From: Asterias rubens
Lineage: Eukaryota
Length of the DNA stretch: 64,000 bases
Assembly: GCF_902459465.1 (NCBI RefSeq)
Contig: NC_047078.1
Coordinates: forward strand, 6,572,001 to 6,636,000
Direction of reading: 5' to 3'
Positions 26,969-61,500 of this stretch are shown in pieces. Numbering within the stretch: the stretch's first letter is position 1; the number at the start of each line of letters is the position of its first letter. Below the pieces are notes generated by a model, which worked only from the letters and a program-made list of their open reading frames with translations, was not told the DNA's origin and ran no database searches. The position numbers were made by a program, and so were the translations under genes.

Positions 26969-29900
26969 ATGTCGCTTCACGAGACACTTCTTATGTTTGT
27001 ATTTGTTGCTTCAGTCGGAATGGAAGGTAAGTTTTGATTCTTCAATAAAAAAGAGTCGTTTTATCACAAATGTGTTGCGTTTGAAAAAACAACGCCTCCC
27101 CTCAAAACAAATAAAAAGAGAAAAAATAATTAAAGCAACAAATTAATTTACAAATCTCAAAATAATATTGACAACGATCACTATTATACTTTGTTTGAAA
27201 TCATAGTCGGCTATTTTGGTATAAATTTATACACGTTTCTTCTATTTTCGTAATTACTTCGACCGGTTTATAAACATGTGGCGGGTTCAAGTTTAATTAT
27301 TTTATTTAATCATTTCCCTTTTATTTTATTGAGAGCAACATCCCTCTCAACTTCTTTTTACTGTCTTTACATGACGTATGCCCTATTGATCCGATGCAAC
27401 ACGCATTTCTCTTGTCGCCAAACTGGGTGTAAAAGGCAGTGGACACTATTGGTAATTACTCAAAATATTTATGAGCATAAAACATAATTTGGTAACGAGT
27501 AATGGGGAGAGGTTGATAGTATAAAACATTGTGAGAAACATCTCCCTCTGTAGTGGAGTAGTTTTCGAGAAAGAAGCGATTTTCCACAAATTTGATTTCG
27601 AGACCTCAGATTTAGAATTTGAGGTCTCGGAATCAAGCATCTGAAAGCACACAACTTCGTGTGGGGAGGGTGTTTTTTCTTTCATTATTATCTCGCAACT
27701 TGAGGAATTGAGTTCAAATTTTCACAGGTTTGTTATTTTGTGCATATGTTGAGATACACCAAGTGAGAAGACTGGTCTTTGACAATTACCAATAGTGTCC
27801 AGTGTCTTTAACATGCACACAGCGACATTGATGGAACTGGTATAAGTCGAGCATTTTGCGGGACTGCGTTCCGCGTGCAAGAGGTCAATGGTGGTCAGCA
27901 GTTTGTAAAAACTGATAGTACCAAAATTAACGTGAAAGTTTTGTTGACGCTAGATGGCAGCAGACTTGATAACCAGGTAAATTGCCATTGTTTATTACGT
28001 TCTGAGCATGTGCACAAAACCGACAATGGATTTACCTGGTAAATCTGCTGCTACCTAGTGTTCCAAAGTTTACAAGTCTTGTTATTCCCTGACTTCCTTT
28101 ACAACTGCAAATCATGGGATATTTGATTCACTGATTATTAAGGGCTTGACATGAATATCACTATAGTCGACTGGGTGAAATTGTTTAACAGGAATTCCAC
28201 TTCTTTATCACACAGTTTACGCATGCGTATGTTATGTCGGCCAGGAAGCAAACTCTGTCAAGGGTGAACCACCTCTGAAGTTACTGCCTGATCAAAACCC
28301 GTGTGAATGCACGGAGTTTCGTCCCGGTGGGGTTAACACAAAGCGACAGGCAAAGCCTCGTGAAGTAACGTTTGGTAATGACGGTCATCCAGAAGGCTGG
28401 ATTGAGAAGGACTGCATCAAAGGTATGACCTCATGTTTGTTGCTATCTTTGCAAGATGGACGATTCGATAACTCGTTTTGGGTTTGTGTCAATAATTGTT
28501 TCATTTTCCGGTTAACTCCTACAGAAGCAGCAACGCCAACTCGTCAACAGCAAGATGATGCCCAGAGTGGTAAGTAGTATTTTTTTTCGTTTTTTTTTTC
28601 GAAAGAAACCCATCGTGCCATATTAATAAAGGAATAAAAGGGTTGCGACGAGTTCTTAAACTGCCGTTCAAAACCAGCAGGGTCGTGGCCGTGCGATAAA
28701 GGCCCTCGCCTTCAGTTTAAGAACAAGTAACTGCTCTTTTATTCCCATTCATAAGTACCTTTATGGTTAAAAGGCGTAATGAAGTATGAAACTCTGTAAA
28801 ACTTATCCGTTTTTCGACGTCCTTGAGCTCTGTACGTGTGTTGCATTTTTATGACTGTGACGGTTTTCGGATATGCATTCGTGCGCGTATGTAATATGCA
28901 TCTAAACGTATCCGAAAACAACCGGTTATAAACGGCTCCAGCTGGTCATTCAACCGTTAAATCACCCCCACGTGACGCGCTCTCCACCAATGGGAATAGC
29001 GAAACTATTATATATATTATATATAACGAAGTAAAATTCTACAAAATAATGTTTACATCTTAGAGACGTTATGTAATAACAATAATTGTTTGTTCTCCCT
29101 TACTAGATACAACTTCCATGCCACCTTGCGACCCCTGGTCCTTAACAACGGACGTATTATTGAACATTCCTCCAATTGGAGAATCATTTCAGTCATACCC
29201 TGTTACACTTGAGTTCACACTGCACGGCTCTACCAGTGATCAGGTGGACATAACCTCTTACAACAACATGAACCCTCTTTGCATTGTTGGTAAGTTAGCA
29301 TTGTTTTGATTCTTAAAACATTGGATTTAAATCATGGTTTATTCTGCAAAGTAAATAACATGGAAGATAATCATAGATTTTTAGAGTTCAATTTTAAAAC
29401 AACTATACAGGAAAGTGCTTTATCGTCTGGAAATACAAATTTACCAAAGTGGTGTTTTTTATATTTTTAGTAAAATTTAAATTAGGTCGTGACACTTGTG
29501 TCCTTAAGCAAGACGCCTAACCATGGTTGGTTCGTAAAGTTGGTAGGTAGTGCTTACCCGCCAGGCTTCTGATGGATCATACCCAAGCCTACATCCGTAC
29601 TGTAAAGGGGGTAACTCTGTTTCAGCCGGAGAGTAAGTGGCAATTGCCCCTGGAAAAATAGTTTTAAAAACTGCCCTGAAAAAATCTTATGTCGTCAAGT
29701 TCTCGACCACTGTCAAAACAACGGACTTGATAGCTGACCAGCAACATGGGTTCATTCCTGGAAGGTCTTTTTCTACAGCATTGCTGTCAGCTAGTACTCA
29801 ATGGCTTCAATCTTTGGACGCACGAGTACCAATGGATGTTGTCTCCTTAGACTTTAGTCGTTTGCATGACACTATAAGCCACAATATTCTTGTTAAGAAA

Positions 29901-31859
29901 CTCCAACTTTGCTACAATATTAAGGGTGCTGCTCTTGACTGGATTGAGTCGTTTGTAACAAACCGCCTGCAACGAGTTGTCTACAAAGGCTTTACTTCAG
30001 ACTGGCTACCGGTCGGTTCAGGAGTGCCACAGGGCTCTGTACACGGCCCCCTGCTTATTGTTTTGTACGCTAACGATCTTCAACTTCAAATTCCTTCAAT
30101 CCTTGTACAGAACGCAGATGACAAATGTTTGTTTAAAAATGATGTAACATGACGCGCCGGATTCTCTACTTCAGAATTACTTCAACACTATAATAGAAAG
30201 GTTTTCGGTAACACCATGTAATGACTATCTCTAATGAGTTGGGTGGTTCTGAAAAGAACCGTTTGTTGAGTTGAAACCAACGGTTCTTTTCAGAACCACC
30301 CAAACTTATTAGAGATAGTCATTAAATGGTGTTACCGCAAACCTTTTTCTCTATCGTATTTCCACCATCATGCAAAGTTTCAAACCCTACTTAAACACTA
30401 TACCGTGTGTCTCAAAAAAAACTATACACCTTTTGAAATGACTGCCGAATAAAAAGTAAATGATTCTGTAGGGAAAGGTTTAGGTGTACGGATAGCTTAT
30501 GGACTGACCTTTGATATGGCACCAATAACTGCGAATTTTTTTTTTGATTGAGTTGATTTCGAGACCTCAGATTTAGAGCTTGAGGTCTCTAAATCAACCG
30601 TTTAAACGCACACAACTTCGTGTGTCAAGGGTGTTTTTTTTCTTTCATTATTATCTCGCAAGTTCGATGACCGATTGAGCTCAAATTTTCACAGGTTTGT
30701 TATTTTATGCATATGTTGAGAAACACCAACTGTGAAGGCTAGTCTTTGACAATTACCAATAGTGTCCACTGCCTTTAAAGGAACACGTTGCCTTGAATCG
30801 GACGAGTTGGTCTCTAAAAAGCGTATTATGTGCTATTGAGCTTTTAATTTTTTAAGCAATCTCAGCTCCCTTGTGAGTTTAGCCTGCTGAAACCAAATCA
30901 ATCCCAATAACCATCAATGTCTTGTTCTACGATACAAAACGTCGTCAACTCGTCCCAATTTCGTCATGTTGCTAAACAATTTCCTGCTAAGCAGAAATGA
31001 GCCGTATGCCTATACCAGTTGTGACATGGTAGTTTGGCCGGTAACCCTTATTTTGCAAGTTAGCGCTACTTCATTGTGCTAAACTGCTGTTGGTGCTTAA
31101 ACAGCTTTATTCATTCAGACTTATTACATTTATTTACATATTTCATGAAACAGTGTAAACAAATAAACTAAGCTATTTAATGAGACAGAGAAAAATAACT
31201 AAATAAAGTATGGAGGCATCATCTGGAAGCCGATGCTTATGTAGGGATGCCAGGGGACAGACAATTAATATAACATAAACGGGGACAAGAACGTACGGAC
31301 AGACAATTAGAACAAAGACAGACATGATTAAGACAACAATGATGAGAATAATAATTAAACAACAATAATTATACCAATAATAATGATAATAATTATTCAA
31401 TCTCGGGGATGTGAAGAAGTGCAAATCCTGATCACCCTTTTTTGAATGGTCATTAGTGAATGAAGCTTGTTTTTAGAAACTTGTGCCCAAATGTTTATGA
31501 AGTTTTATCTTGGATTGGAACCAACCCCAAGTATTTTTTCGCCAGACCTTGATTTATGTGTTTTCTTGTATGTTGTAGAACTGGACGCTGTGAAACAGGA
31601 GACGCGCATCTTTGAAGAATTCTATCCCACAAAAGACTTTCAAGATGCCTTTGATGGCTCCACACACTACTGGGTTACAATCAATCAATACAAACTGGAA
31701 TTTGGTAGACTGGGAGAAACCGAGTCGCTTATTGAGTGTCGAAATAATAAGAACATTGACGACGTTACCATTTGGTCCCAGTCTGATATGACTGTAGCAT
31801 TCTATGGGACCTGTCCTGACGCTGGGTTGTTTGACATAAGTTCCTTAATGTATTTTTAG
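26969..31859 (+). CDS. Secreted protein, array gene 1 (signal peptide + constant Cys-rich domain + Methyltransf_FA-like domain), 257 aa
   Basis: Exons 26969-27026 (MSLHETLLMFVFVASVGME), 28216-28422, 28525-28569, 29107-29289, 31579-31859. All introns GT-AG phase 1, ORF intact. The C-terminal LEFTL..S..D.V.I / HYWVTINQYKLEFGRLGET pattern resembles PF12248 by eye. Confidence 0.85.
27430..27811. mobile_element. Major TTAA-AG MITE copy (opposite orientation)
   Basis: AAGGCAGTGGACACTATTGGTAAT ... CAATAGTGTCCAGTGTCTTTAA. Confidence 0.85.
29715..30150 (+). mobile_element. CR1-like LINE reverse transcriptase fragment
   Basis: QQHGFIPGRS...DVV.LDFS...DTISH.IL..KL...GVPQGSV.GPLL..LYANDL...ADD; truncated with degenerate catalytic motifs; lies in an intron of array gene 1. 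Confidence 0.85.
30199..30344. repeat. Foldback/palindromic element (relative at 61271-61536)
   Basis: Arms AGGTTTTCGGTAACACCATGTAATGACTATCTCTAATGAGTTGGGTGGTTCTGAAAAGAACCGTT and its near reverse complement. Confidence 0.8.
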
Positions 31860-36486: not shown

Positions 36487-39400
36487 ATGTCGCAGCTTAT
36501 TTCTCCCTTAACTGCAGTTTTACTGGCCACTGCCTACTTCCTTATTGGTAAGAACTACTAACTTCATGATGTTAATATTTTATTTAAATTTTCATTCTTT
36601 TATCTGTCTGATTGCCATCTTTTGGGTAATATTGCTCCTTATTTTCGAAAAACACATCTGCCCTTTACGAAACCATTGATCGGCTTAGTATTTGGTTTAA
36701 GCTAGCTTGGCCCGCGGTTGTTTTGGCGATTGCGTGTGCTTTGCGCACGCACTCGGAGTCGGGGCTTCAGACGAGACAGCAAAGCCTGAAGCCAAATCCA
36801 GAGCCCTAGTTTAATTTATACATTATGCTAAACAGACCTTTATCGTGCTACATCCATCTTGGTCATGTGCCACTTATCGAATAACAATAATGAATGCCAA
36901 TAATCATTTTGCAAACAGGAACCAGACTCTTTCATTCTTCAAGCCTTGGTTTGATAACGTTGATATCAATGGGAGAAATTCAAAATGGCAACAGCATGAT
37001 AAAATGTCTATTGAACCGGTCGAACAACAAAAGAGACTTGGAATTAACTCATATACATTTCGTCACACTGAATTATCCTCTTGGCTTTGGCTTAGACTAT
37101 ATAAACGAACAAATTGAATTCAAAATGATATGATCTCACTCTCATCCTTTTTAGCCGACGCATGCGTTTGTTATGTCGGTGATGAAGCAAACTCTATCAA
37201 GGGTGAACCACCTCTGAAGTTACTGCCTGATCAAAACCCGTGTGAATGTACGGAGTTTCGTCCCGGTGGGGTTAACACAAAGCGACAGGCAAAGCCTCGT
37301 GAAGTAACGTTTGGTAATGACGGTCATCCAGAAGGCTGGACCGAGAAGGACTGCATCAAAGGTACGACCAAATGTTTATTCTCTTTTCAAAACGTTTGTT
37401 GGCAGTGTACATTGAGTAAAAAGTGTTGAAACCAAACATGGGCGTGACACGCGAGCTTGTGATTATAAAACGATTTCTTCATTCCTATTGGTCGAGAGCA
37501 ACGGCCGGGATAGTCTGGTTCCCAGACCCAAAAATCCGGGACAGTAGTTTTGCCACATCACGCGATACGCGCGACGCGCACAGCATTCCCTTATAAGGAG
37601 TTGTTTACCCGAGGGCTTTACAATTTCATAGCTGGAGGGGTGTTGTGTTGAAAGAAATCATTGAACCGTTATAATGTTTGCATTTATTTTACTTTTTGAC
37701 CAACAAGTGTTGATGTTTTTTTGACCGAAAAGGTGTTTATGAATGGGAATCAAAGTATGTTGAATGGGTTTTCAACTAGTGGTTTAAACCCGCCGAGGCC
37801 TGACTCTTGATAATTTACCTCGACATCGTCTCGGTAAAATTATCAAGAACCAGGCCTCGTTGGGTTAAAACCACTAGTTAAAAACTGATTCAACACACAT
37901 TGATTCCCATTTTCCACATTTTTTCAAGAACGTCAAGCCCATCCGCATTTAAAGAGCCCAATAATTTACGGGAATGTGAATCCCCTACAACACTTGACGG
38001 CGATCAATTCAAATTTGTTATTGATTTATAGTGAAACAGACACCCCACTTATCTATTTTCATCAAGTATAATGACCGAACCTTTTTTCTATTGTTTAATA
38101 TTTTGTATTTCTTTCCGTCCGCCTTTCGGGCCCGTTTACTTATTGATTCATGTTCTCTTACCCCTCAAAATATGCCCAATTGTTTTCTAATTCACTTGAA
38201 TGCTTACCGAACTTAAATCTTACACTTTAATAATGTTTTGTCTTTGAAATTGTTCAATATTATATATTTTTGTTTCTCCCTGACTAGAGACAACACCAAG
38301 TCACACCACGTCACCTTGCGGCCCCTGGTCTTTCACAACGAACGAAGAGCTGAACATTCCTATATATAGAGAATCATTTCAGTTGATCCCTGTTACACTT
38401 GAGTTCACACTGCATAGCTCAACTGATGATCTGGTTCGGATAATTCCTTACAGCAATTCCATCCGTATTTGTACTGTTGGTAAGTTAGCATTGTTTTGAT
38501 TCTTAAAACATAGAATGTAAATAGAATGGCAATGTGCTTAAAGGCAGTGGACACTATTGATAATAGCTCAAAATATTTTTTTCGCGTCAAAACCTACTTG
38601 GTTACGAGTAATGGGGAGAGGTTGATAGTATAAAACATTGTGAGAAACGGTTCCCTCTGCATTGATGTAGTTTTGTAGAAAGAAATAATTTTCCACGAAT
38701 TTGATTTCGAAACCTCAGATTTAGAATTTGAGGTCTCGAAATCAAGCATCTGAAAGCACACAACTTCGTGTTGTGACAAGGGTGTTCTTTCTTCTATTAT
38801 TATCTCGCAACTTCGACGACTAATTGAGCTCAAATTTTCACAGGTTCATTATTTTATGCATATGTTGAGATACACCAAGCGAGAAGATTGGGCTTTGACA
38901 ACTACCAATAGTGTCCACCGCCTTTAAGCGAAAATATATTATTAAAATATAACTGTTTCCAAACTACAATTTGTTGTTTCAATTATAGCAATTTATTGTT
39001 TAGCCGTAAAGTTTGGTAAAGTATTTGTAAAAGAAACACGTTCTGAGAGAACGGTTATAAAACACATGACATTTGGACAATGTAGACGTGGTATTGAGGT
39101 TTTTTTTTGCATGTACTGCCAAGTGTGTGGTGTACCAATCAATTCAACCATAACTGAAAGTTACATGGGCCCAAATCGTCGAGTTGCTTATCGGCAGCAA
39201 ATAATTGCTTACATTGTCCTGCTGAATAGGAAATGAGCAGGGTATATGTCAAAAATATTACATGTCACCTCATGAACAGTATCCTAATTGTTGTTGCAAC
39301 ATTTTTATAATTTGTTTTTCTTTTCTTTTTTCTTTTGAGTGGAGCTCTAAGACTCCGTTTATTCGTCACCAGTAAAAACAAAGTACAAACAAATTCAATG

Positions 39401-39942
39401 GAACATTAACACATTCTGTTAGAACAATACATTAAGGATAAAAGAGGCTAGTTAAAAGACAATGAACAAAGGTGATATTACATACCAAACAACAAGAACA
39501 TCAAAACATGATAAAATGCAAGAAAAAACGTTAAACTTAAAACGAACGTAAAGGAAAGTAACTTGGAAGATGAAATTATTTTTACTTAGCTACCTTTGCA
39601 GCTCTATGACAATGGGCCTCGAATGAGGTCCTGCAACGCAAGTACTATCCAACGAGAACCTGATTCTATCATTCATTGTTTATTTTAGATCTGGACGCCG
39701 GATCTCACCAAATGGGCATAAGGGGAAGCAACGCTACCATACAGAACTTTCAAGATACCTTTGATGGCTCCACACACTACTTAGTTACAATCAATCAAGA
39801 CAAAATGGAATTCGGTAGACTGGGAGAAACCAAGTCCCTTGAGTGTCAAACAAATAAGACCATTGACGAAATTACCATTAGGTCCGAATCGGATATTATG
39901 ACTGTAGCTTTCTATGGGACCTGCCCTGACACTGGGTTTTAG
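36487..39942 (+). CDS. Secreted protein, array gene 2, 237 aa
   Basis: Exons 36487-36547 (MSQLISPLTAVLLATAYFLI), 37155-37361, 38288-38479, 39689-39942; GT-AG phase 1, ORF intact. Confidence 0.85.
37435..37910. mobile_element. Dispersed CpG-rich repeat ending in a ~170-bp palindrome (37742-37910); relative at about 23060-23400
   Basis: Shared GGCGTGACACGCGA...CATTCCTATTGGTCGAGAGCAAC...CACATCACGCGATACGCGCG; palindrome ATGGGAATCAA...TTGATTCCCAT. Confidence 0.7.
38538..38927. mobile_element. Major TTAA-AG MITE copy
   Basis: Same TIRs; inserted about 60 nt after exon 3 of array gene 2. Confidence 0.85.
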
Positions 39943-42900
39943 AACTTATAGTGCCCCAGCATTCTAGTTGATCACATTTTTTTGGGCATCCCAGTTTACT
40001 TTGGATTTTGCAAATGTTTTGCGGAAATTTAATAATTTGGATGCTATCGATTGCATTACAATCTGATTTAAAAATAATACCTTGTCAACAAACACCGTTG
40101 CAATGTGACGTCATCACGTACCGGTTCACTGCAAAAACTCCAGTGTTAAATTGATTCCTTTCGTAGCTGGAAATACGCCAACAAAGTTTACCAAATACTT
40201 GGGATAACTGATACCGTGTGGATATGGTCACATGATGATACCAATAAAATCAATTTAACCCAATAATTTGTGCAGTGTTTTATTTAATTAAATTTATTTA
40301 TTTACTGAATTAAAAAAGTAGTTTTTAATTATAATTATTTTTACGATAGTTCTTACAATTATTACGAATTTAAGCTTGGCATTCCCAAGATGGACTTTGC
40401 AGTCTTTTCACAGCAATTGAAGATGAGTGTGTCTCGTCCTGCCAAGGTCAGGTACAATCCTTCAAGTAGTTTCATTTCCCGTAGCTATCGATCGGCAACT
40501 AGTTTTATTTGGCAATCAGCACAAATGTTACACAACTCCACAGTTTTGCCTGTTTCTCCATATATTTTTTTTACTACTTTGCCTTCATAATTGCAGCTAT
40601 AAAAAAGCTTAATAAGAATAGCTAAGCTTTCTTAAAATGGACTTCAAACAGTTAAATGTAGGCCTACAGCATCATTTTGCGAAGGAAGTTTTTATTAATC
40701 TCGGAGGATTCCTCGAACCTCATCATGTTAAATCTCATCTAATATTTTTGTGATAATATTATAAATCGTGAGATGTAACTTTACTTTGTAATGATGTTAT
40801 ACAATGCTGTCACGAGCGGAGGCACAGACGTCATATGAACCTTTGCATCATATGGGTCAGAACCCCCCCCCCCCCCCCCGCTGAGAACCCTCTCCCTGCC
40901 CTCTAAATGAGACTGAAATAGTGCACAATTTAATGGTTCTTACATATCAACCCCTCTATATTATGTCTTTGTCCCACTTGCCCACTCCACATTGGAAAGT
41001 ATAAAAGCCACTAGTTATAATAACTTGACTGTTTTTGCTTCAGGTTAGTTGTATACAGGTATATATTCTTTTTGGAGCGTTTCAGATAGGTGTTGCTGAA
41101 TTTCACGTTGCATCTAAATGTGGCTGATGGTTTTGTTTTAACTTACTGTTCATAAAACAAGTTTTATAGACACGGCAATTAAGTTGTTGTGAGCCCGGTG
41201 AGGATTGTAATTTAATTGTTGCATGTAAATGCTTGTACAAAATTGTAAAATGATATTGTAAGTATAATGGTTAGGATCCTTCAAGCAATATTAAAACTAA
41301 TGTCTCAACTTAACTGCATTGGGTTTCTGATAGATGTTTGTTTTATTCGTGTAGCACTTGACTCACTGCTCGTATGATTTCAAAACAGAGGGATACTAAT
41401 TTTGACCTTAGTTGGTCTTCACTCGAATCAACGATAAACACGATCATTCTGACGTTGAAAGGTTGCAGTTATAAAAACTGTTTTAAATAAGGTTTTTTTT
41501 TTACACTTCAATTTAATGGGAAAAATCGATGCCGGTCGTAGACCACCTTCGTTACGCAAAGGGTTTTAATAATTAATATCTTTTCAATAGGATTTTAAAA
41601 CGGAAGGAAACTTATTATTTTTGTCCTTGGTTGGTCTTTGCACGAACCAAGTATTACCGATAAACACGAGCCTTCTGACGTTGATGGCTGTTGAACATCA
41701 CAACTTGGTAAACATCTCCACTCACGAGACTTGTTGTTTTGATTTGCTCTTCGCAAACTGATTCACGACTGACGGTTAAGGTATCGCTTCAATGTCGCAG
41801 CTTATTTCTCCCTTAACTGCAGTTTTACTGGCCACTGCATACTTCATTATTGGTAAGAACTACTTTTCATTCTGTTAATAGTAATACTGTTTTATTTTCT
41901 TTATTGTAGCTGCATGATTGCCATCTTTGGTGTAATTGTCTCCTTATTTATGAAAAACGTAAAAGCCCTTCACGAAACCACGGCTTCGGCTCGGGATTCG
42001 GTTCTATAGCTAGTTTGGCCCGGGGTTTGCAATGCGCGTGCTTTGCGCAAGCTCTCAGTCAGGGCTTCAGACGAGATAACGGAGCCTGAAGCCGAGTCCA
42101 GAGCCGAATTTTCGTATAGGGCCCTATGTTCAATTCATACATTATGCTGAACTAAAAAAAAACTGGACATTAACTGTTATTACCGGGATATTCAAACAAA
42201 TATTGTCAAACGTACGTGAGGTGAACACATACAGTTTGTCAAACTGAAATATCTTTTTGACCTTTACTGAGGATTCGTTCAAATTGATTTTCATCTCCTT
42301 TTCGTTATGATTTTTAGCCGACGCATGCGTATGTTATGTCGGTGATGAAGCAAACTCTATCAAGGGTGAACCACCTCTGAAGTTACTGCCTGATCAAAAC
42401 CCGTGTGAATGCACGGAGTTTCGTCCCGGTGGGGTTAACACAAAGCGACAGGCAAAGCCTCGTGAAGTAACGTTTGGTAATGACGGTCATCCAGAAGGCT
42501 GGACTGACAAGGACTGCATCAAAGGTATGACCCTCAAGTTTGCTTTTCTCTTTTCATGATTGATAGACGATTTATTCAACTTTTGTTATTAAAGGAACAT
42601 TACAGGTTGTGTTTTTGCTAACAAAAAGTTTGTTTGCAGTGTGCATTGACTACACATTGAGAAACAGCACAAAATGCTTAGTTTTGTTTTTATCAAGAAC
42701 GTCAAATCCATCCGCATTTAGAAAGACCAAACCGGGTACCAACCATATCTCTGGTCAGTAACTCAATTCACGGCGATCAATTCAAATTTGTTATTGATTT
42801 ATAATCAAACAGACACCACACTTATTTTTTTTCATTAATTGTAGGGATGACCGATTTTTTTTTCTTGTATAATATTTTGTTTTTCTTTCCTACGCCTTTC

Positions 42901-43706
42901 GGCCCTTTTTATTTATTGATTCATTTGATTTTCTCTCACCCCTTAAATATGCCCGATATTGTGTTCTCATATCAATTGAACACTTATCGATCTTAAATCT
43001 TACAAATATTGTTTTGTAATTGATTTTTTTTTAAATATTAGAATACTATTTTTGTTTCTCCCTTACTAGAGACAAAGCCCAGTGATACAATGTCTCCTTG
43101 CGGCTCCTGGTCTTTCACAACGGACGCATAACTGAACATTCCTCCCTTTGGAGAACCATTTCAGTCATACCCTGTTAGACTTGAGTTCACACTGCAAAGC
43201 TCAACAAGTAATCTGGTGCGGATGACCTCTTACAATAATTCCATCGGTATTTGCACTGTTGGTAAGTTAGCAATGTTTTGATTCTTAAAACATTGGGTGT
43301 AATTCGTGTTTTTTTTATGGGAATATCTAAAAATAGAAAACATGGAAGATAACTAGAGATTTCAGAGTTTAATAAACAAAAACACAAAAAAAACAAGCTA
43401 AGATGCTTCAGCCAAAAAATATATTATCAAAATATAACTGCTTCCAAATTACATTTTTTCTAATTATAGCAAACACTTATGCACCGTTTAAATTACAGTT
43501 TTTCTAATTATATCAAACACTTAAGCAATTTACTGTTTATCCGTAAAGTGTGTTCAAGTCTTTAAACAAACACGTTCTGAGGGAACGATTACCAAACATA
43601 ATATGACATTTGGACATTTAATTTTGTAGATGTTTTATTCAACTGTGTCACTCTTTAACCCATCTCCACTCCATTGGGATAAAGCATATATGCATGGATA
43701 AGCATT

Positions 43707-47964: not shown

Positions 47965-50900
47965 ATGATGTTCAATGTGATATGTCTCGCGTTTGCAATG
48001 CTACTTGTTGCGTCAATCGTAATGAAAGGTAAGGCATGTTCTAACACACAAGGGAAAGTAATTTTTTAAAAGGGGATACCAAATTTGACTACATGTACAT
48101 TGATCTGAACGAAATTATGTACCATGATCATTCGCCACTCGCTATGGTCTCCAGTTACCTTTGTTCTTGTAATAATATAACATGATTATAATACATTAAA
48201 ACTATTTTTCTTTCTTTTTTCTTGTCGATATTTTGACGTGTTGTGATATTTTTTAAATATTTGGTAACGCAATTTTTAAAATAGTTAAAGGTACATCAAT
48301 CTCTTGAATGATAGCACGTACTTAGTTCTAGTAAAATATTTAAATTGAGCTAACACTGTGGTACCATTTAGTCATTTTCACAGTGTAATGTCAGATATTG
48401 TTCATATTCAAATGTAAAAAGACGATACGTAATCGGGTTTATTTGTTAACAATTGTTGTACCATGTTTTTACATACTTACCAATTTACGGGGATTTACGT
48501 TTTTCCCTTTTTTGTTTCTTTATTTTTGTGTATGTTTTATAGCCTAAATAGACGGTGTTCACTGTCTGCCTTAAGTTTGGTAAATTTGATCACGCACTTC
48601 ATTCAAATATAAAACATTTCACTAAGTAAATGTTCCTAAAAAAAAAATTGTTCATCATTTTTTATTTCAATTTGAAATGACGATTAGTTTCTCTTGAAAT
48701 TGCTGATTGTATACAATGTACATCACTGTGTTCGTTTAAAAAAGGTATATTGACTGATGATATATAGGTTCAACGCAATTTAAACATAATTAAATATATA
48801 AATGCATCAATATATAGAACAATAATAATGTATTTGAGACGACGGATAATGTAATTGAGATGACGGGGAAATTACTGTTTCCGTTTAACCTCACAGCCGG
48901 CGCCTTCGTATGTTATGTCGGTGATGAAGCAAACTCTATCAAGGGTGAACCATCTCTGAAGTTACTGCCTGATCAAAACCCGTGTGAATGTACGGAGTTT
49001 CGTCCCGGTGGGGTTAACACAAAGCGACAGGCAAAGCCTCGTGAAGTAACGTTTGGTAATGACGGTCATCCAGAAGGCTGGACTGACAAGGACTGTATCC
49101 AAGGTATCGAACTCATCAAATCATATAATTATTTTAATTTTGTTTTGTTCATTTTGTATACATTTTTATTTCTGATGCTTCATTTTGCAGCAATTTCCAA
49201 GTATGTAGTCTTTGGTAATCAAAACGCAACCTGAAAAAAGTAATTTCGGATTTTTCCCTACGCCCATGTGTGTTATAGCACTGTATATCACTCACCACTT
49301 TCCCGAGGTCTGTGGAAAAAAAATCACAGGGCATATTACTCGGGTGGGTCAAGTTAAACCCACGACCTTTGGTGTTATAAAGCAGTGTCTTACCAACTCG
49401 AGTAATATGCCTGTGATTTTATTCACATAACTCGGGAAAGTACTGAGTGCTATTAAACACACTAGAGTTAAACTAAACTTGTATTATTCTCTCGCAAAAT
49501 TTTGGTGTTGACTTGGCTCGAAGCTAAACCGAAGTGAAGTTCCCGCACAAATGCAGCATGGCGACGGTGTTGTTTTACGTAACTGCATTTAATTTGTTGA
49601 ATAAGGGAACCCTGCCCCTTGCAAAAGGACACCCGGGGGAAACCCTGGAAAAATGTGCGAAGTCATAAAAGGACCAACTGGATTGGGTTTAGAAAGCCCA
49701 TCCAACATGACAGAACTAGCCAAGGTGTGTTTTGTGACCAATGAATAATGTATGATAAAATGAACTATTTTTCCGCGATGCAAATTTAGCAACTGATTAT
49801 GTTGTTTTCCCTCATTAGAGATGCAGACAAGTGGTAACATAACGTCACCGTGTGCCACGTATTCCTTGCAAAGTTATAAAGAACTGAGCATTTCACCATT
49901 AGTGGTGTCATCTCAGCCGTACCCAGTTACGCTTGAGTTTACGCTACAAAGCTTGAACAACAATGACGTGGTGGAGATAGACTCCTTCAGCATGGATAAT
50001 TATCTTCTCTGCCGTTTTGGTAAGTCAGGATTGCGTTGATCGTGTGAATTCCAGGAACTTGAGGCCTTTTCACACTAGCTCAATTTCGAACCGCGTTGAA
50101 ACCTAACCCGTGTCCTCTCCGGTTCAACCTCACTTCTTTTCAACACGGATCAGAGTAAAGCAACATTCTTACTTGGGCCAATTTTATAGAGCTGCTTAAG
50201 CGAAAAAGTTGCTTAAGCACGAAAATAGCTCGCTTATTTTACACGTTACTGGCCAAAATTTCATGCCATATACATTGCTTTTGACTAGTATTTAGCTGTT
50301 GTTTACTTAGCATAACAATTGAGTAGAGTCTTGGCCGGTAATCTGATTTTACTAAGAAATGAATTTTTTGCTTAAGCAAAATTTTGTGCTTCAGCAGCTC
50401 TATGAAATTGGGCCTTGGTCTTTACGTGAACCGGCTAATGCGTGAACCGTATATAGATTCACACCGGAAAAAAATGCAATTTCGATCCCGATTGAAATTT
50501 TCAACCCTGGTCCCTGACAGGGTTGATTTCAACCACGCTAGAGCATGCTACCCGGATCGGAAGCGGATTGAAAATTTTACAGTGTGAAACGGGTTGAACA
50601 AAATCTCCGGTTTGGAACCGGTTCCGACCCCGATATTTTGGACAGTGTGAACAAGCCGTTGTTGAGTTCAAAATTCAAACACTTATTAAAAATACGACCA
50701 AACTGCCACACCTTTGGTCACTGCTGTTGTCAATAAAAGAAAATTGTTTGTTTTTAATTCGAATAGCTTTGGTAGCCAAATTTAAATTACTTAATTGTAC
50801 TTCTTTTTAGTAAAGCGCTTCAAACGCAATCGTTATCACTTTGCAAATAAACACAAATTAAAGGCTCTAAACTATAAAAAAAAACTTGGTAATGTACCTC

Positions 50901-51978
50901 GTATCGAACAACAATAATGAATGCTAATAATCATTTTGCAAATAGGAACCAGACTATTTTGTTCTTCCAGCCTCAGTTTGGTAACATTGATATCAATAGG
51001 ATAAATTCAAGATGGCTTTACCATAATCAAGGTCTAAAGAGGATGTCAATACGATTATTCAGGTTTTGGTATTATTATTAAAGTCACCTGGAAATATATA
51101 TTTTTTTTCTTTCAAACATAAGAGTATATGCTTACGAACAATAAAACAATTAATTTTTTGTTTAGTAATTGTTTTTCACGATTTATATGTATAAAAAATA
51201 TATAAAGTTGTTTGGGGGGCTGACTCCGCCTACCCCTTTTGTGACGTCAATCGAGGCAGACTTTGCCTGCAATGCGTATAGTAAACACACGTGCAAAGTA
51301 CATGTACGACCAAATCGTGAGTTGGTACATTTCAAAAAGTGTTATTCTGCATTCCGCAGCAATACACCTGGTCGGCATTGCCGGGAAAAAAAAATTCACG
51401 ACTTGGTCCGTACAGTACTTTGCAATTGTGTTTACTCTACGCATTACAGGCAAAGTCTGCCTCGATTGACGTCACGAACAGCGCCCTCTCGGGTCGGGGT
51501 TTACTCCTAGATTTGTAAATAACATAAGAACTGATTTTTTAAAACCTTAGTTAACTGTTTATTCACATTCCACTCATCAAAACACATATTTTAGTGACAC
51601 AAGCTTTAATTTGAAAAAATACCACTTCCAGGTGACTTTAATATTGACACATTTCTTGTTTTGTTCGGGTTGTGTGTGTAATACAAAATTGTATTGTGTT
51701 TTTTAGAACTGGACATCTTTGCAGATCAGATGCGCAACAGTAACTTCAGAACCACTCAAACAGTAGACTTTCAAGATGCTTTCGATGGCTCTACACACTA
51801 CTGGCTGACAATCAATCAATACAAAATTGAATTCGGTAGACTGGGAGAAACCAGCGCCCTTAAATACCAATCGATGAGTGAGATAATAACCGGGGTTAGC
51901 ATTTATACCCTGTATGGCACGACTGTAGTATTCTACGGGACCTGCCCGGCTGAGGTTGAATCTGCAGACTTTCAGTAA
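47965..51978 (+). CDS. Secreted protein, array gene 4, 247 aa
   Basis: Exons 47965-48028 (MMFNVICLAFAMLLVASIVMK), 48897-49103, 49819-50019, 51707-51978; GT-AG phase 1, ORF intact. Confidence 0.85.
50063..50657. mobile_element. MITE (GGCC..TTCACACT TIR) with a nested second MITE at 50175-50414
   Basis: Outer GGCCTTTTCACACT / AGTGTGAACAAGCC; inner GGGCCAATTTTATAGAGCTGCT / AGCAGCTCTATGAAATTGGGCC. Confidence 0.7.
51078..51641 (+). mobile_element. Kolobok-like THAP element, internally deleted copy in the opposite orientation
   Basis: TTAA-AGTCACCTGGAA ... TTCCAGGTGACT-TTAA; homologous to 11237-12025, with the MPTRCIAAEC THAP start on the minus strand. Confidence 0.72.
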
Positions 51979-55566: not shown

Positions 55567-58500
55567 ATGACGTTCAACAAGGTATTTCTTCCGTTTGTAG
55601 TCCTACTTGTGGCACCAAGCGCAATGAAAGGTAGGAAATGTTCTGACGAAAAAAAAATGCACTTTAAAGGCATTGGACACTATGGGTAATTGCTCTAAAC
55701 AATTATTAGCATAAAGCGGCCTTACTTGGTAACGAGTAATGGGGAGAGATTGATAGCATAAAATGGTGTGAGAATTGGCTCCCTCTGAAATGACTTAGTT
55801 TTCGAGAAAGTAGTAATTTTCCACGAATTTGATTTCGAGACCTTAGATTTAGAATTTGTGGTCTCGAAATCAAGCATCTGAAAGCACACAACTTCGTGTG
55901 ACAAGGGTGTTTTTTCTTTCATTAATATCTCGCAACTTCGACAACCAATTGAGCTCAAATTTTCACAGGTTTGTTAATTTATGCATATGTTGAGATACAC
56001 CAAGTGAGAAGACTGGTCTTTGACAATTACAAAAAGTGTCCAGTGTCTTTAAAGGGGAAGAACAATTTTTACTACAAGTAAATGTGACCGTGAATCTGTA
56101 CAATGATAAATCACCATGATTTCCATCAGTGATCGTTGCTCCTTTCAACAACTTATAAATGCATTAACAAATTGTCGATACTTTGTCTTACCAAAAGTTT
56201 TTCTGGTGTTTTTAAAATTGGGTTATGTAAATTTTGAAATGTTTAGGCTCAAGTCGCACCGATCTCCTAAAATGCATGTGGCAAGTAAGAAGAATAAATA
56301 AATATTAAACTTGCGGGTACAACCATGTGTAAATCTCTTATGAGTGAGTGTTGGCTCTGAAAAGAGCCGGTGTGGTCTCGACGTTTCTATCTCATTCAGA
56401 TTGGGCTTTGGTTTTCAACAATACACTTTAAAGCAAAGTATTGTTTTTTTTTTTTACTGTGTGACTGTTTTAATTCCATATTATGATGACATAGACATTA
56501 ACTCTTAAAAGCACATTATTAGTTTGAAGGGAATTATTTCGCAAATTGTGGTATTATAAACATCTGCATTGTTTCTACCACGTCAGTTTTTATGTTTATT
56601 TATTTTAGAGTAAAACCCAAAGATAAACCCTTCCTTTAAAGACAATCTGAAATAATTATTAGTTTTCACTGTAATGTCAGATTTATTTTCTCTCAGGGTA
56701 ATAAGAGACATGACTGAGAGACATGACTAATAAACTATCTATCTATCTAAAAAAAAAACATGTTTTGCTTGTTTAATAGACCGCCCTCTCTCGTTCAAAT
56801 GGTGAAACAAATCACAATAAGGATGGAAATGACAACCGTTGTTCTTGTATTTAAATCTTTCATGTTTTTAATTGCCGGTTCATATTGGAAAAATATGAAG
56901 AGACTGGTGGTTGCAGACAACGAAGGTGGTTATGATAATAATTATATTCGCTCCTGATAAAATAAAACCTCCCACTTAAGTATGTATTGATCAATATTAG
57001 GACCCGTTTATGCAACCCAAATCACCGCAACGTTAACATATCAACCTTGTGCGGTAATGATCTTAGCAGCTTCGGCTAGCATTGATTAATTAAACGATCC
57101 ATCAATAAAAGCCGGCCACCAAGCTTCTATCGTGTTAGTTGAAGGGGTTACGTTATAATATGTATTCAGTGGAAACTATTGGTAATTACTGAAAATAAGT
57201 CTTAGCATAAAACTTACCTGGTAACAAGAAATGGAGAGCTGTTGATAGTATAAAATATTGTGAGAAACGGCACCCTCTGATGTAACGTAGTTTTCGATAA
57301 ATAAAAGTAATTTTCCACTAAAATATTGATTTCGAGATCTCAGAATTAAATTTTGAGGTCCCGAAATCAAGCATCTGAAGTGAAAGCATGACAGGGCGTG
57401 TTTTTTCTTTCATTGTTATCTCGCAACTTCGACGACCAATATTGAGCTCAAATTTTCACAGGTTTGTTATTTTATGCATACTTATGTTGAGACACTAAGT
57501 GTCTTTGACAATATTATCAAATTGTTTCAGTGTCTTTATTGTTATTATTGTTCTGTTTTTGCGTCACCTTTTCCCTTCCCATTTTTGGCGAATGTATTTT
57601 TTATTTGGGAAATAACTTTTGAATATAGAAATAAATATGAAGAACAAATTGTACCATGATCATTCACCGTACGCAATTGCTTAAAAGTGACCATTGCTTC
57701 TGGTAATAAAATTTCATATAATAACATACAAATTGCTCTATTTAATTTGTATGACCAAAAGTGCTTCTGATGTATTAGGGGCCTATCACATTGGATATAG
57801 TAATTGTTTAAGTGTTACATGTTTTCAACAGTGAAGTCGCACTATTAAAACATGCACGTATTCAGATCGGGTTAACCCTAGCTTTAAACTACACCTATAA
57901 AGGAGAAGTAATCATTTGGATTTTGGAATTATTATATTATATTATTTTAATGCCATGTTTATATGCAATAAAATTGCCATGTGAAAATTTCTATTTCATA
58001 GCGTTATTTATTTAATTGCCGAAAATCTTTAGCGGTTATGTCTGCCCAGAAACAAAACGCCGTGTTTGGAATAAACAATTTCAGAAACATTTCACAATCT
58101 CAGATTGGAACTCTTTTAAGTTCCTATCTCTACAACTGCCTTCCTTTAAAGGGAATTGTTTTTTTTTTAAATTGTATGTATGTTTTCAACAGCTGCAGTG
58201 CTTCACACTTAGACAATGGACTACAACAAAACATGGAATTTTGTTCATAGACCGCCCTCTCTCGTCTATATGGTGAAAACTAAAATATGGTTGAAGGATG
58301 GGAATGACAGCAGTTGTTGCTCAATTGAAATTACATCCTTCAAGCTTTTATCAGCCGGCTCATATTGGAACAATGGATGGGATAGGAGGTTATGATAATG
58401 ATTATTAGTAATTTTTTTCTATTATTAATGTTTTAATGTCATTATGTAAAATAAAATTACAGTGAAATGCATTTTGGTTTTGCGTGTTTAAAAATATGTT

Positions 58501-61500
58501 ATACAAAAATACACACTAAAAATTTACCCTTTTCAAGAAAATACATATGCACATTATTAAATGTCCGTGCTGAAGTATGTACCTATCAATCATCTAGGGC
58601 CTGTTGTTTTATGGTCACAGTTTGTACCTTTAAACCTGTAGCCAGCGTGTGTGTTTGCTGAGCCGTATCTTCCTTTATTTACTTTCCCCACCTGTGTGCT
58701 TTGATAATGGCGCACTTGTTTCCTTTCAAGACGTGTTCATGCTTGACAAATTATGTGGTATGAAAGCTAACGCATGCCATAGCCGCACCCTCCTTCGATT
58801 CTGGGAACCTCGGGGCGGGATGCTGACCGGTGAAAACCTCGGGGATGTGATGTTCACTGCTTCTACCGTGGGGTCTGACGGCGCTACTGGCTGGACGTGG
58901 TATTGAGGGTCTCGGACTACCTTAACTGTGATGTACTACCGAAGGCTACCACGGAAAAATTTAACGACCTCGCCACCAATTTCCGGCCGTTTTTTGTTTT
59001 TGTTTCCTTTGCGCATGGACGACGACCGCCATGATTGGAGCGTTGAACAACAACACTCACACACACAAACATCATAAACATGGCGGAGTTCGATGTCACT
59101 GCGAGTCAAAAACGGCCCAATTTTGACAATTGTTTACAAACTGTTATTTTTCTCTCTTTTTTTCTGGATGTATATGTTATCCGGTAACCCTTCTTCTCAG
59201 GTAAGAAACAAATTCAGTGGTTTTGGAGTTAATTAACGGCGGGCAAATTGGTGGCGACGTGCGGAAAATTATCCACTGAACTAATTGTTATCATACACAC
59301 AATGTTTCAACCGTTGTCTTTGTCAGTTAATTTCGTTTTCTTATTGTTTTGGTAATTCCATCGTTTTATTAGTCTGCCGTGCGTTACGACTATGGGGTTT
59401 AACCTTGTGAGTTGGTCGTACGTAACACTGTTAAGGCAACCACGGAGTACTGTACGTTATAATATTAACCTTGCGGGTAAGGATCTAACAACACTCTGAA
59501 AGGCACTGGACACCTTTGGTATTAATTGTCAAAGACCAGGACTCTCACTTGGTGTATCCAAAAATAGGCATAAAATAACAATTTTTTGTCAAAAAATTTG
59601 ACTCAACTCGAAATTGAAAGAAAATAATGAAGGAAAAACACCAGATGCCCAATAAAAGGTTTCAGGCCTGAAGCCTTTGAATATTATCTAAGTGAGGCAT
59701 TATACCTCTTTCTCAAAAACTTCAGAGGGAGTCGTTTCCCACAATGTTCTATGTTATCAACAGCTCTCCATTGCTCGCTACCAAGTGTTTTTTTACGCTA
59801 ACAATTGTTTTGAGACATTGCTAATAGTGTCCAGTGCATATATTCGAAATTACCTGTGAAATATTATTTTATAATTGATTGTTTTTTTTATCACGCAGTT
59901 AACGCACGCGTATGTTATATCGGTGATGAAGCCAGCTCTATCAAGGGCGAACCACTTCTGAAGTTACTGCCTGATCAAAACCCGTGTGAATGCACGGAGT
60001 TTCGTCCCGGCGGGGTTAACACAAAGCGACAGGCAAAGCCTCGTGAAGTAACGTTTGGTAATGACGGTCATCCACAAGGCTGGACTGACAAGGACTGCGT
60101 CAAAGGTATGACCACAAAATTGCTCCTATTTTGTCACTTATTTTGTTATATTTCTCATGCCTCAATTTGACTATAATCTGCACGCATTTTCACATTCCGT
60201 TTTCTTTAAAAAAAAAAAAAAAACATAGTTAATGACCTGACGTCTTCATCCTAGAGCCTGGAGTCTTTCTAGAAGGCCATTTCCTATTTTTTATTATTTT
60301 TTTTTTTTCATTTATACCATGGTTCCTTTTGGTTGGTAAGCAGGTTGCAACAGCTAGGGCCTAATACAAACATAATCTCATCTCTTCTTTCAAGTGGTAA
60401 TTGAAGTTACCCAACTGTTTTGATTTATGTTTCTTCTTCGACCCATCAGAGAGGCAGACCACTTATACCTCACCACCCTGTGACACATATTCCTTGAACA
60501 GTAAGCAAGGACTAGCCTTTCCTCCTTATGGACAATCATTTCAGTCGTACCCCGTTAAGCTTGAGTTCACTCTGCAGAGCTCAACCAAAGATAGAGTGGA
60601 GATTGACTCTTTCAACATACAAAACATTTATCAATGCACTTTTGGTGAGTAAGTCTGGTATCCATTTTCCCCCCACAAGTTATGTTAATTTTTATTGTTT
60701 TTATGCATGCATACCTATATACACATTTTAAAGACACTGGACACACTATTGGTAATTGTCAAAGACCAGTGTTCTCACTTTGTGTATCTCAACATATGCA
60801 TATGAAAAGTTGAGCTCAGTTGTTCGTCGAAGTTGCGAGATAACAATGGGGGGAAAAACACCCTTGTCACACGAAGTTGTGTGCTTTCAGATGCTTAATT
60901 TCGAGACCTCAAAATCTAATTCTGAGGTTCGAAATCAAGATCGTTACTTCAGAGGGAGCCGTTTCTCACAATGTTTTATACTATCAACAGCTCCCCATTT
61001 CTCGTTACCAAGTTAGATTTTATGCTAATAATTATTTTAAGTAATTACCAATAGTGTCCACTGCCTTTAAGCAAACTTTTGTTATAAGACAGTGTTGTTT
61101 TGTGTGAAAGTAGTCGGTAAAGGCAATAACCAAAATATAATTGTTGCCCCAAAATAATGTTTCCAAACTCTCCCGTTCAGAACCCGCACATTATGTTGCT
61201 TTCCCAAACAAAACCTAAGTTCAGTACACAAGACCAATCAACCAAATCAAAATTATTATTATATAGTAAAAGTTTTGCGGTCACTCCATGTAATGATAAT
61301 CTCTTAATGAGTTGGAGTGGTTCTGAAATGAACCATAGAAGATGACGACCAAAGCATATTCATCGAAACGTCGAGTTGAAAACAATTATTCGATTCAGAA
61401 CCACCCCCACCCCAACTCATTTATTAATTTAATGTGCAAATCGAGAAAGTGATTTTCATGCTGGGCATGATGAATAAAGAATTGAATTGAATTGAAATAA

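What the first reader, a model, noticed from the sequence alone, without database searches (positions are those of the whole stretch)
28216..60105. Exon-restricted nucleotide homogenisation: 115 of 117 core bases identical in five otherwise old paralogs
Seen: exons at 28216, 37155, 42318, 48897 and 59899 are all exactly 207 nt. In the 39-codon core (28275-28391 in gene 1) only two positions vary, both synonymous (TGC/TGT, GGT/GGC). Flanking introns diverge within about 10 nt, and the signal exons and exons 3-4 split into clearly older groups (genes 2/3, 4/5, 1). Protein-level selection cannot freeze synonymous sites. Inference: ongoing gene conversion focused on this exon, or a nucleotide-level constraint such as an RNA structure or regulatory element. 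Even the nonsense-bearing copy retains it.
Basis: partly seen in the sequence, partly recalled or inferred. Interest (0 to 1): 0.8.

Follow-up and report, generated by a model that had tools for sequence, protein, structure and literature searches.

The report
Exon-confined gene conversion in starfish lectin-like genes
Five old neighbouring starfish genes for secreted lectin-like proteins keep one 207-base exon almost letter-identical, silent sites included, most likely because the copies keep recombining with each other inside that exon; this is a clean but not unprecedented case of exon-limited concerted evolution.

Summary
The window is Asterias rubens LR699108.1:6572001-6636000. It holds five tandem 4-exon genes (signal exon, 207-nt phase-1/1 exon 2, exons 3-4 folding as a ConA/galectin-like beta-sandwich; no Pfam family).

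- In the 117-nt core of exon 2, 115 bases are identical in all five copies. Introns are unalignable, and exons 3-4 have dS 0.3-1.3.
- I fetched the sister species A. amurensis, which has eight copies. Exon 3+4 trees pair every A. rubens gene with its ortholog at 100% support. The exon 2 tree is a star.
- The few exon 2 variants are spread as a mosaic across paralogs and species (28 of 66 site pairs fail the four-gamete test).
- A. rubens gene 1 is a crossover product whose junction lies inside exon 2.

Best reading: recurrent non-allelic recombination (short-tract conversion, occasional unequal crossover) confined to this island of homology, plus strong selection on the encoded N-terminal module. 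That module also occurs in tectonin and FAMeT-type starfish proteins.

Not settled: the two species share no fixed core difference, and a contig from a third, different starfish keeps 112 of 117 core bases with only 1-2 silent changes. An added nucleotide-level constraint is therefore possible. No RNA structure or Rfam signal supports it. Assembly artefact is excluded. This is a new member of a known kind.

The parts
26969..31859 (+). Gene 1 (NCBI LOC117301751): e1 26969-27026, e2 28216-28422, e3 29107-29289, e4 31579-31859; 242 aa by homology
   Evidence: Splice sites and open frame. e1+e2 match P0002. A spliced e2-to-e3 joint of a gene-1-like transcript appears in run X10.
28216..28422 (+). 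Exon 2 of gene 1, 207 nt; near-invariant core 28275-28391. The crossover junction relative to A. amurensis lies inside this exon.
   Evidence: Upstream sequence is orthologous to Am_gX (85-96%) and downstream sequence to Am_g1/P0017 (90-100%).
28525..28577 (+). Short alternative terminal exon used by NCBI's 105-aa model of gene 1 (P0002)
   Evidence: The P0002 C-terminus reads from this stretch.
36487..39942 (+). Gene 2: e1 36487-36547, e2 37155-37361 (core 37214-37330), e3 38288-38479, e4 39689-39942; 237 aa
   Evidence: A 237-aa gene is called here in L001. The ortholog is P0018.
41792..44699 (+). Gene 3 (nonsense-bearing copy): e1 41792-41852, e2 42318-42524 (core 42377-42493), e3 43070-43261, e4 44431-44699
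   Evidence: The ortholog P0004 in A. amurensis is intact.
43129..43131 (+). In-frame TAA in exon 3 of gene 3
47965..51978 (+). Gene 4: e1 47965-48028, e2 48897-49103 (core 48956-49072), e3 49819-50019, e4 51707-51978; 247 aa
   Evidence: The ortholog is P0022.
55567..61947 (+). Gene 5 (LOC117301483, P0021): e1 55567-55630, e2 59899-60105 (core 59958-60074), e3 60450-60644, e4 61670-61947; 247 aa. Its exon 2 is the most diverged copy.
   Evidence: There are 8-9 private substitutions in exon 2.

Best explanation
The locus is a tandem array of old paralogs. There are 5 in A. rubens and 8 in A. amurensis. All encode secreted proteins.

Each gene has three parts:
- a signal exon;
- a 207-nt symmetric (phase 1/1) exon 2 that encodes a Cys-containing N-terminal module (C-x-C-Y-V-G-[DQ]-E ... 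P-C-E-C-T-E-F-R-x-G-G-V-N);
- exons 3-4, which encode a fast-evolving ConA/galectin-like beta-sandwich.

Shown: the paralogs predate the split of the two Asterias species and have diverged freely in introns, signal exons and exons 3-4.

Shown: exon 2, above all its roughly 118-nt core, is exchanged among copies. Its few variants are distributed as a mosaic, and one gene is a crossover chimera joined inside the exon.

Inferred mechanism: the exon is the only stretch long and similar enough to pair between paralogs. Double-strand-break repair therefore uses another copy as template (short-tract ectopic gene conversion) and occasionally resolves as an unequal crossover, which changes copy number. 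Strong purifying selection on the module removes converted or mutated variants that change the protein. Each conversion also erases linked silent differences, so the island of identity maintains itself. The exon ends (about positions 1-58 and 177-207) are reached less often and keep paralog-specific, orthologously conserved states.

Inferred: selection favours a uniform N-module (common partner, assembly or processing) combined with diversified lectin-like domains.
For: Synonymous freeze: dS for exon 2 is 0.02-0.17 against 0.3-1.3 for exons 3-4. Among amino-acid-invariant codons, 2/39 in the core against 17/39 in exons 3+4 carry silent variation (p = 1.2e-4).

Tree conflict: exons 3+4 give five ortholog pairs at 100/99-100 support with long paralog stems. 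Exon 2 gives an unresolved star with no ortholog pairs apart from the gX/gY/Ar_g1 group.

Mosaic variants: sites 14, 95 and 177, two of them transversions, are shared among non-orthologous copies in both species. 28/66 site pairs are incompatible and Rm >= 6 in 207 nt.

Crossover: Ar_g1 switches from Am_gX-like to Am_g1-like sequence within exon 2. Copy number is 5 against 8.

Asymmetry: Ar_g5 exon 2 has 8-9 private changes while Am_g5 is consensus-like. P0003 shows a g5-type exon with consensus residues in the middle.

The silent sites can change. Ar_g5-Am_g5 exon 2 dS is 0.142, at least as high as the 0.105 of its exons 3+4. The homologous exon of the apparently single-locus lectin L6-like gene differs at 7 of about 195 nt between the species, 3 of them silent.
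Against: - The classical signature of concerted evolution is absent. Paralogs do not cluster by species and no core substitution is fixed in one species. The expectation was only about 2.7 silent differences.
- Pooled ortholog pS in the core is 0.029 against 0.097 in exons 3+4 (Fisher p = 0.008, but the pairs are not independent).
- L009, from another starfish, keeps 112/117 core bases with 1-2 silent changes against 3-6 in the shorter exon ends. Conversion within a genome cannot produce conservation between species.
- GC3 of the core is not raised (0.39), so there is no GC-biased-conversion footprint.
- No de novo event or within-population tract was observed directly.
Confidence: 0.7

Rival explanations
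1. Nucleotide-level purifying selection on the exon 2 core is the main cause of the identity, and conversion is incidental. The selected feature could be a dense splicing-enhancer array, an RNA or DNA regulatory element, or a small-RNA target or source shared by all copies.
For: - Among 13 copies in two species, no species-specific core substitution exists and only 5 sites vary.
- Pooled ortholog core pS is 0.029 against 0.097.
- L009 from a different starfish has a 66-nt perfect block, and core pS (0.04-0.07) roughly equals pN (0.044), so all codon positions are slowed alike. Three of its 5 core changes are CpG transitions.
- CpG observed/expected is 1.11 in the core against 0.57-0.72 in exons 3-4.
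- The first ~20 nt of intron 2 are also shared by most copies and L009.
Against: - Folding z-scores are -1.2 and -1.1 on the two strands, and no Rfam match falls on any exon 2.
- No second open frame spans the exon.
- Ar_g5, an intact annotated gene, has accumulated silent changes in exon 2 at or above the neutral rate.
- Constraint alone does not explain the four-gamete failures or the chimera.
- The cross-genus evidence is a single contig of unknown species and uncertain orthology. If neutral divergence is only about 0.12, 1-2 silent changes are not unusual.
Confidence: 0.2
2. A single past homogenisation or a young exon. Exon 2 was spread or replaced among the copies shortly before the A. 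rubens/A. amurensis split. It has simply had little time to diverge, and there is no continuing exchange.
For: Both species have the same consensus and no species clustering. Whole-exon ortholog pS (0.082) is close to that of exons 3+4 (0.097).
Against: - Ortholog pairs differ at exactly those sites that are polymorphic among other paralogs (95, 177, 14). This is unlikely by independent mutation.
- The Ar_g1 chimera and the copy-number difference arose in or near the time of species divergence.
- 13 lineages evolving independently since the split should show about 15-18 silent core changes, whereas 3 silent sites vary (my calculation).
- L009 shows that the exon with the same borders is older than Asterias.
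Confidence: 0.07
3. Assembly or polishing artefact: consensus collapse of repeated exons.
For: The metagenome contig L002 joins gene-2 upstream sequence to gene-4 downstream sequence across exon 2. This shows that short-read assemblers can be misled here.
Against: The same exon with the same private end-differences is found in an independent chromosome-level assembly of another species. All sampled 31-mers are held by several independent runs. Copies keep distinct variants at their ends.
Confidence: 0.01

Closest known systems
Domain- or exon-restricted interlocus gene conversion in tandem families, for example the CEACAM N-domain exon (PMC7042247), primate class I ADH (PMC3409193) and Tigriopus GOT1 paralogs (PMC3728101); theory in PMC3924837. 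These papers appeared in my literature search; I read titles and abstracts only.
   Same: A segment of old tandem paralogs is kept far more similar than their age allows, silent sites included, while neighbouring segments diverge or diversify. There is tree conflict between segments, and unequal crossover changes copy number.
   Different: Here the tract is very short (about 120-190 nt), coincides with one symmetric exon, and is flanked by introns with no residual similarity. No species-specific homogenisation is visible between the two species compared, and no GC bias is seen.
Toxin or immune gene families with a conserved leader or pro-region and a hypervariable mature domain (conotoxin superfamilies, sea urchin Sp185/333, PMC3342357). 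From my own knowledge and the abstract only.
   Same: A secreted-protein family with a strikingly conserved N-terminal segment, including silent sites, joined to a rapidly evolving functional domain. Here omega is 0.3-1.1 between orthologs and dN/dS is about 0.4-1.1 between paralogs.
   Different: The conserved part here is not the signal peptide, which is the most diverged exon. It is a separate exon-encoded module that also occurs in other domain architectures. No toxin or immune role has been shown.
Lectin L6-like / tectonin proteins of Asterias (P0014 XP_033640591.1, P0007) and a FAMeT/EGF protein (P0013)
   Same: They share the exon-2-type N-terminal module directly after the signal peptide (34-58% identity; hhalign probability 97% to P0013). 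In the L6-like gene the module is also a separate exon.
   Different: The C-terminal domains differ: Tectonin propeller, or EGF plus Methyltransf_FA, against an unclassified beta-sandwich. The L6-like gene lies on another chromosome record (LR699107.1 in A. rubens), and its exon shows ordinary divergence between species.
Synonymous constraint elements / ultraconserved coding exons (from my own knowledge)
   Same: A coding stretch in which silent sites are as conserved as replacement sites, possibly across genera.
   Different: No overlapping function (RNA structure, second frame, Rfam family) was found. The cross-species evidence is one contig.

Membership tests
Interlocus gene conversion / concerted evolution tract | Paralog similarity in the tract, including silent sites, far above that of flanking segments of the same genes | tested here: met
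   dS is 0.02-0.17 against 0.3-1.3. Silent variation occurs in 2/39 against 17/39 invariant-amino-acid codons. Introns are unalignable.
Interlocus gene conversion / concerted evolution tract | Phylogenetic conflict between the tract and the rest of the gene | tested here: met
   Exons 3+4 give orthologous pairs at 100% support. Exon 2 gives a star.
Interlocus gene conversion / concerted evolution tract | Mosaic sharing of variants among paralogs (recombination signal) | tested here: met
   28/66 incompatible site pairs and Rm >= 6. The chimeric Ar_g1 has its junction in the exon.
Interlocus gene conversion / concerted evolution tract | [quoted passage not shown] | tested here: not met
   No fixed core difference between A. 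rubens and A. amurensis, and species labels are not clustered. Power is low: about 2.7 silent differences were expected.
Interlocus gene conversion / concerted evolution tract | GC enrichment at silent sites from biased conversion (frequent, not obligatory) | tested here: not met
   Core GC3 is 0.39 against 0.45-0.47 in exons 3-4.
Synonymous constraint element (nucleotide-level function in coding exon) | Silent-site divergence between species significantly below the local neutral rate | tested here: inconclusive
   Ortholog core pS is 0.029 against 0.097 (p = 0.008, pairs not independent). L009 core shows 1-2 of 26.7 silent sites changed against 3-6 of 17.5 in the exon ends (p = 0.01-0.28 depending on the copy compared).
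Synonymous constraint element (nucleotide-level function in coding exon) | An identifiable overlapping function: conserved RNA structure, known RNA family or second reading frame | tested here: not met
   z = -1.18 and -1.13. No Rfam hit falls on exon 2. Other frames are closed, apart from a 46-codon antisense stretch without splice signals.
Galectin / ConA-like lectin superfamily (C-terminal domain) | Jelly-roll beta-sandwich fold | tested here: inconclusive
   In the AF2 model, residues ~97-240 have pLDDT ~80 and are all-beta. The top Foldseek matches are galectins, LamG/LNS domains and PL7 lyases, with TM by target 0.4-0.66 and identity 7-15%.
Galectin / ConA-like lectin superfamily (C-terminal domain) | Sequence-profile membership / sugar-binding motif | tested here: not met
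   No Pfam family for any exon or full-length protein at E <= 1-10. Sugar binding was not tested.
Tectonin / lectin L6 family | Tectonin propeller repeats | tested here: not met
   P0007 has PF19193. P0004 and P0021 have none. Only the N-module is shared.

The most novel reading that the evidence does not exclude
The ~118-nt core of exon 2 is under selection as a nucleotide sequence in its own right across asteriid starfish genera. This could be an exonic regulatory or splicing element, or a small-RNA-related element, shared by a whole gene family. Ectopic conversion would then be the means by which the family keeps every copy matched to it. That would explain why two Asterias species share no fixed difference and why a third starfish keeps 112/117 bases with as few silent as replacement changes.
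Probability: 0.25. Interest if true: 0.65.

Novelty: new member of a known kind. Interest (0 to 1): 0.42.

Why it matters
The locus gives an unusually clean natural example of how short an island of homology can sustain concerted evolution. A single ~200-nt exon surrounded by unrelated introns stays uniform in genes that otherwise diverged long ago, and the same island serves as the breakpoint for gene fusion and copy-number change between sister species.

It also defines a previously unnamed, exon-encoded N-terminal module. Starfish combine this module with at least three different lectin-type domains: a beta-sandwich, a tectonin propeller and a FAMeT domain. That points to modular assembly of a secreted recognition repertoire.

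If the core proves to be constrained as nucleotide sequence across genera, it would be a family-wide dual-function exon worth functional study.

Tried and rejected
- Pfam on each exon peptide and on full-length proteins: nothing for this family.
- ESM Atlas on the exon 2 peptide: best score 0.61, uninformative.
- AF2 of the N-module with a 10-sequence alignment: mean pLDDT 48, no fold. In the full-length model the module has pLDDT ~30.
- RNA structure and Rfam: no signal on exon 2.
- Second reading frame: none convincing.
- GC-biased conversion footprint: absent.
- Read laying on four runs of other organism labels, meant as a cross-genus test. The names are coded. At least two runs (X7, X9) are essentially A. 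rubens, with introns showing 0-7 differences per 300-400 nt. X10 carries gene-1-type exon 2 and a spliced e2-e3 contig. The call gave support for splicing but no distant-species comparison.
- Scans of bacterial/archaeal genome contigs and viral contigs for stray starfish copies: none.
- Literature search for the LOC and XP identifiers, and for Asterias plus gene conversion: nothing on this family.
- Metagenome contig L002 (gene-2 5' side joined to gene-4 3' side across exon 2): I could not decide between a real recombinant allele and an assembly chimera through the 130-nt identical stretch, so it is not used as evidence.
- Dibasic processing site in the module (K-R, P-R): not conserved in L009 or the L6-like homologs, so a propeptide-cleavage role is not supported.
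Full report
**Identity of the window and the genes**

The exon 2 peptide finds an Asterias rubens protein (LOC117301751, P0002). Its locus L001, from GCA_902459465.3 LR699108.1, is 100% identical to window 16969-38577. The window is therefore A. rubens LR699108.1:6572001-6636000.

From splice sites, phases and open frames I built five + strand gene models. Each has four exons:
- a signal exon of 58-64 nt;
- exon 2 of exactly 207 nt;
- exon 3 of 183-201 nt;
- exon 4 of 254-281 nt.

All introns are phase 1. The products are 237-247 aa. Gene 3 carries an in-frame TAA at 43129-43131.

NCBI models gene 1 as a 105-aa protein with a short alternative last exon at about 28525-28577. A spliced contig in run X10 joins exon 2 to exon 3 of a gene-1-type transcript.

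**Check of the observation**

The five exon 2 copies align without gaps. Identity starts at the acceptor and ends 10-20 nt into intron 2, and beyond that the introns do not align.

Within exon positions 60-176, only positions 95 (C/T) and 113 (T/C) vary, and both changes are silent.

| Segment | dS among the five genes |
|---|---|
| Exon 2 | 0.02-0.17 |
| Exon 3 | 0.30-1.32 |
| Exon 4 | 0.31-0.69 |
| Signal exons | saturated except g2/g3 and g4/g5 |

Restricting to codons whose amino acid is invariant removes protein-level selection as an explanation. Under that restriction, 2 of 39 core codons carry silent variation against 17 of 39 in exons 3+4 (p = 1.2e-4).

**What the proteins are**

- No Pfam family matches any exon or full-length protein.
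- An AF2 model of the A. amurensis ortholog of gene 3 gives an all-beta C-terminal domain (residues ~97-240, pLDDT ~80). Its best structural matches are galectins, LamG/LNS domains and PL7 lyases, that is, a ConA-like jelly roll at low identity.
- The exon 2 part is not predicted confidently, even with a diverse alignment.
- An exhaustive HMMER search with the exon 2 peptide shows that this module also heads other starfish proteins. One is a tectonin-type 'lectin L6-like' protein (P0007/P0014). Another is an EGF + FAMeT-domain protein (P0013).
- In the L6-like gene the module is likewise a separate exon.

The module is thus a shuffled, symmetric-exon unit placed directly behind the signal peptide of several lectin-type secreted proteins.

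**Sister-species comparison**

The same search returned A. amurensis proteins. I fetched about 65 kb of the A. amurensis array (CP134970.1) and mapped eight copies. These are orthologs of genes 1-5 plus gB (P0019), gX (not in the called-gene list) and gY (P0020).

Orthologous non-coding sequence is 91-96% identical.

Trees:
- Exons 3+4 pair every A. rubens gene with its ortholog at 100% bootstrap, behind long paralog stems. All duplications therefore predate the species split, and exons 3-4 are not homogenised.
- Exon 2 gives an unresolved star. There are no ortholog pairs and no clustering by species.

Among all 13 copies, the core (positions 59-176) has five variable sites, four of them singletons.

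**Evidence for exchange between paralogs**

1. The informative sites of exon 2 are distributed as a mosaic. For example, position 177 (G/C, Glu/Gln) is C in Ar_g5 and in Am_gB, g2, g3 and gY. Position 95 is C in Ar_g1, g3, g5 and in Am_gB, g5. In total 28 of 66 site pairs fail the four-gamete test, giving at least six recombination events in 207 nt.

2. Ortholog pairs differ at exactly these shared sites. This is improbable under independent mutation.

3. Gene 1 of A. rubens is 85-96% identical to Am_gX upstream of exon 2 and unrelated to it downstream. It is unrelated to Am_g1 (P0017) upstream and 90-100% identical to it downstream. The switch lies inside exon 2. This is the expected product of an unequal crossover in the exon, and it fits the copy-number difference of 5 against 8.

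4. Ar_g5 exon 2 has 8-9 private changes while Am_g5 is consensus-like. A metagenome-derived g5-type ORF (P0003) has g5-type ends with consensus residues in the middle.

**Can conversion alone explain it?**

Conversion homogenises copies within a genome, but it should not slow silent divergence between species.

- Between the two Asterias species, pooled ortholog pS is 0.097 in exons 3+4, 0.082 in whole exon 2 and 0.029 in the core. The core deficit gives Fisher p = 0.008.
- The five pairs are not independent if the core is exchanged. With about 27 silent sites, a single lineage pair is expected to differ at about 2.7 sites, so the absence of a fixed difference is not significant.

A scan of metagenome contigs found L009 (JACSEG010020648.1). 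It carries a g5-type signal exon, a 290-nt intron and a 207-nt exon 2 with the same borders.

- Its 31-mers are held only by runs labelled organism H, I, J and 'starfish metagenome'. None of the organisms A-G that hold the Asterias exon hold them. L009 therefore comes from another starfish.
- Its introns match none of the 13 Asterias copies, and its signal-exon region is 76% identical to gene 5.
- Its core nevertheless keeps 112 of 117 bases, with a 66-nt perfect block. There are 1-2 silent changes and 4 replacement changes, three of the five being CpG transitions. The shorter exon ends have 3-6 silent and 8-17 replacement changes.
- Depending on the true neutral distance (unknown; more than about 0.1), 1-2 silent changes are either unremarkable or clearly too few (Poisson P = 0.38 to 0.014).

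I therefore keep an additional nucleotide-level constraint as a live rival or add-on at roughly 0.2-0.25.

Evidence against the constraint reading:
- no excess RNA folding on either strand (z about -1.2);
- no Rfam match on exon 2;
- no second frame;
- Ar_g5, an intact gene, accumulates silent changes in exon 2 at the neutral rate or above;
- the homologous exon of the apparently single-locus L6-like gene diverges normally between the species.

GC3 of the core is not raised, so biased conversion has left no footprint. CpG is retained: observed/expected is 1.11 against 0.57-0.72 in exons 3-4.

**Artefact**

This is excluded. Two independent assemblies, a metagenome contig and many runs carry the same exon. 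The copies keep private differences at their ends that are conserved between orthologs, for example the gene-4 and gene-5 5' ends.

**Verdict**

The most likely cause is exon-confined non-allelic recombination, meaning short-tract conversion with occasional unequal crossover, acting together with strong selection on the encoded module. The second inference, nucleotide-level constraint, is neither shown nor excluded.

Region-restricted concerted evolution in tandem families is well documented (papers listed, abstracts only). I therefore rate this a new member of a known kind. It is notable for three things:
- the very short, exon-coincident tract;
- the crossover chimera that ties conversion to gene birth and death in the array;
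- the unnamed N-terminal module shared by several starfish lectin-type proteins.

Earlier notes of this scan on the same genome report similar patterns in other lectin-like families (s1-150749, s1-178640). I did not test them.

Noticed in passing
window 16969-25245 (- strand) and the whole array: An adhesion-GPCR-type gene (GPS, 7tm_2) lies on the minus strand upstream. In A. amurensis the annotated 830-aa homolog (Lectin_C, GPS, 7tm_2) spans the entire array on the opposite strand, so the lectin-like genes appear to be nested in its intron.
   Followed up: no
window 27432-27814, 30540-30781, 38541-38930, 45583-45962, 52589-52975, 55669-56055, 57167-57468: A ~400-nt interspersed element with an internal palindrome, starting CAGTGGACACTATTGGTAATT, is inserted in introns and spacers of every gene. 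It accounts for much of the intron length differences.
   Followed up: no
window 43676-44097 (intron 3 of gene 3): A very high-copy repeat, with summed contig depth 10^4-10^6 in all four runs. The consensus of the sequence adjoining it in other copies starts like a tRNA (…GGCCGAGCGGTTAAG…), suggesting a tRNA-derived SINE. Next to it, at 44094-44205, is a long hairpin that gives sub-threshold microRNA-model hits on both strands.
   Followed up: no
window 30220-30322 (intron 3 of gene 1): Two facing matches to the histone 3' stem-loop model (39.1 and 34.2 bits, gathering 34) sit inside an inverted duplication. This is probably a palindromic repeat rather than a histone mRNA element.
   Followed up: no
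window 22087-22667: A tandem repeat with a ~20-nt register, seen as shifted self-matches of 96-97%.
   Followed up: no
L006 16073-21700 (A. amurensis): An apparently intact eighth family member (gX, 227 aa by homology) is absent from the called-gene list of that locus. Its exons 3-4 are closest to gB/P0019, suggesting a recent duplication in A. amurensis.
   Followed up: partly
exons 3-4 of all genes: Between orthologs, omega is 0.29-1.14, and exon identity (91-96%) is no higher than intron identity. The beta-sandwich domain therefore evolves at or near the neutral rate, apart from a conserved block (F-Q-D-A-F-D-G-S-T-H-Y-W-V-T-I-N-Q-Y-K-L-E-F-G-R) in exon 4.
   Followed up: partly
L002 (ENA ERZ1764477 contig, 2201 nt): This contig joins gene-2 upstream sequence (99.2%) to gene-4 downstream sequence (98.6%) through exon 2. 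The switch lies somewhere in exon positions 58-187. It is either a recombinant allele or an assembly chimera.
   Followed up: partly
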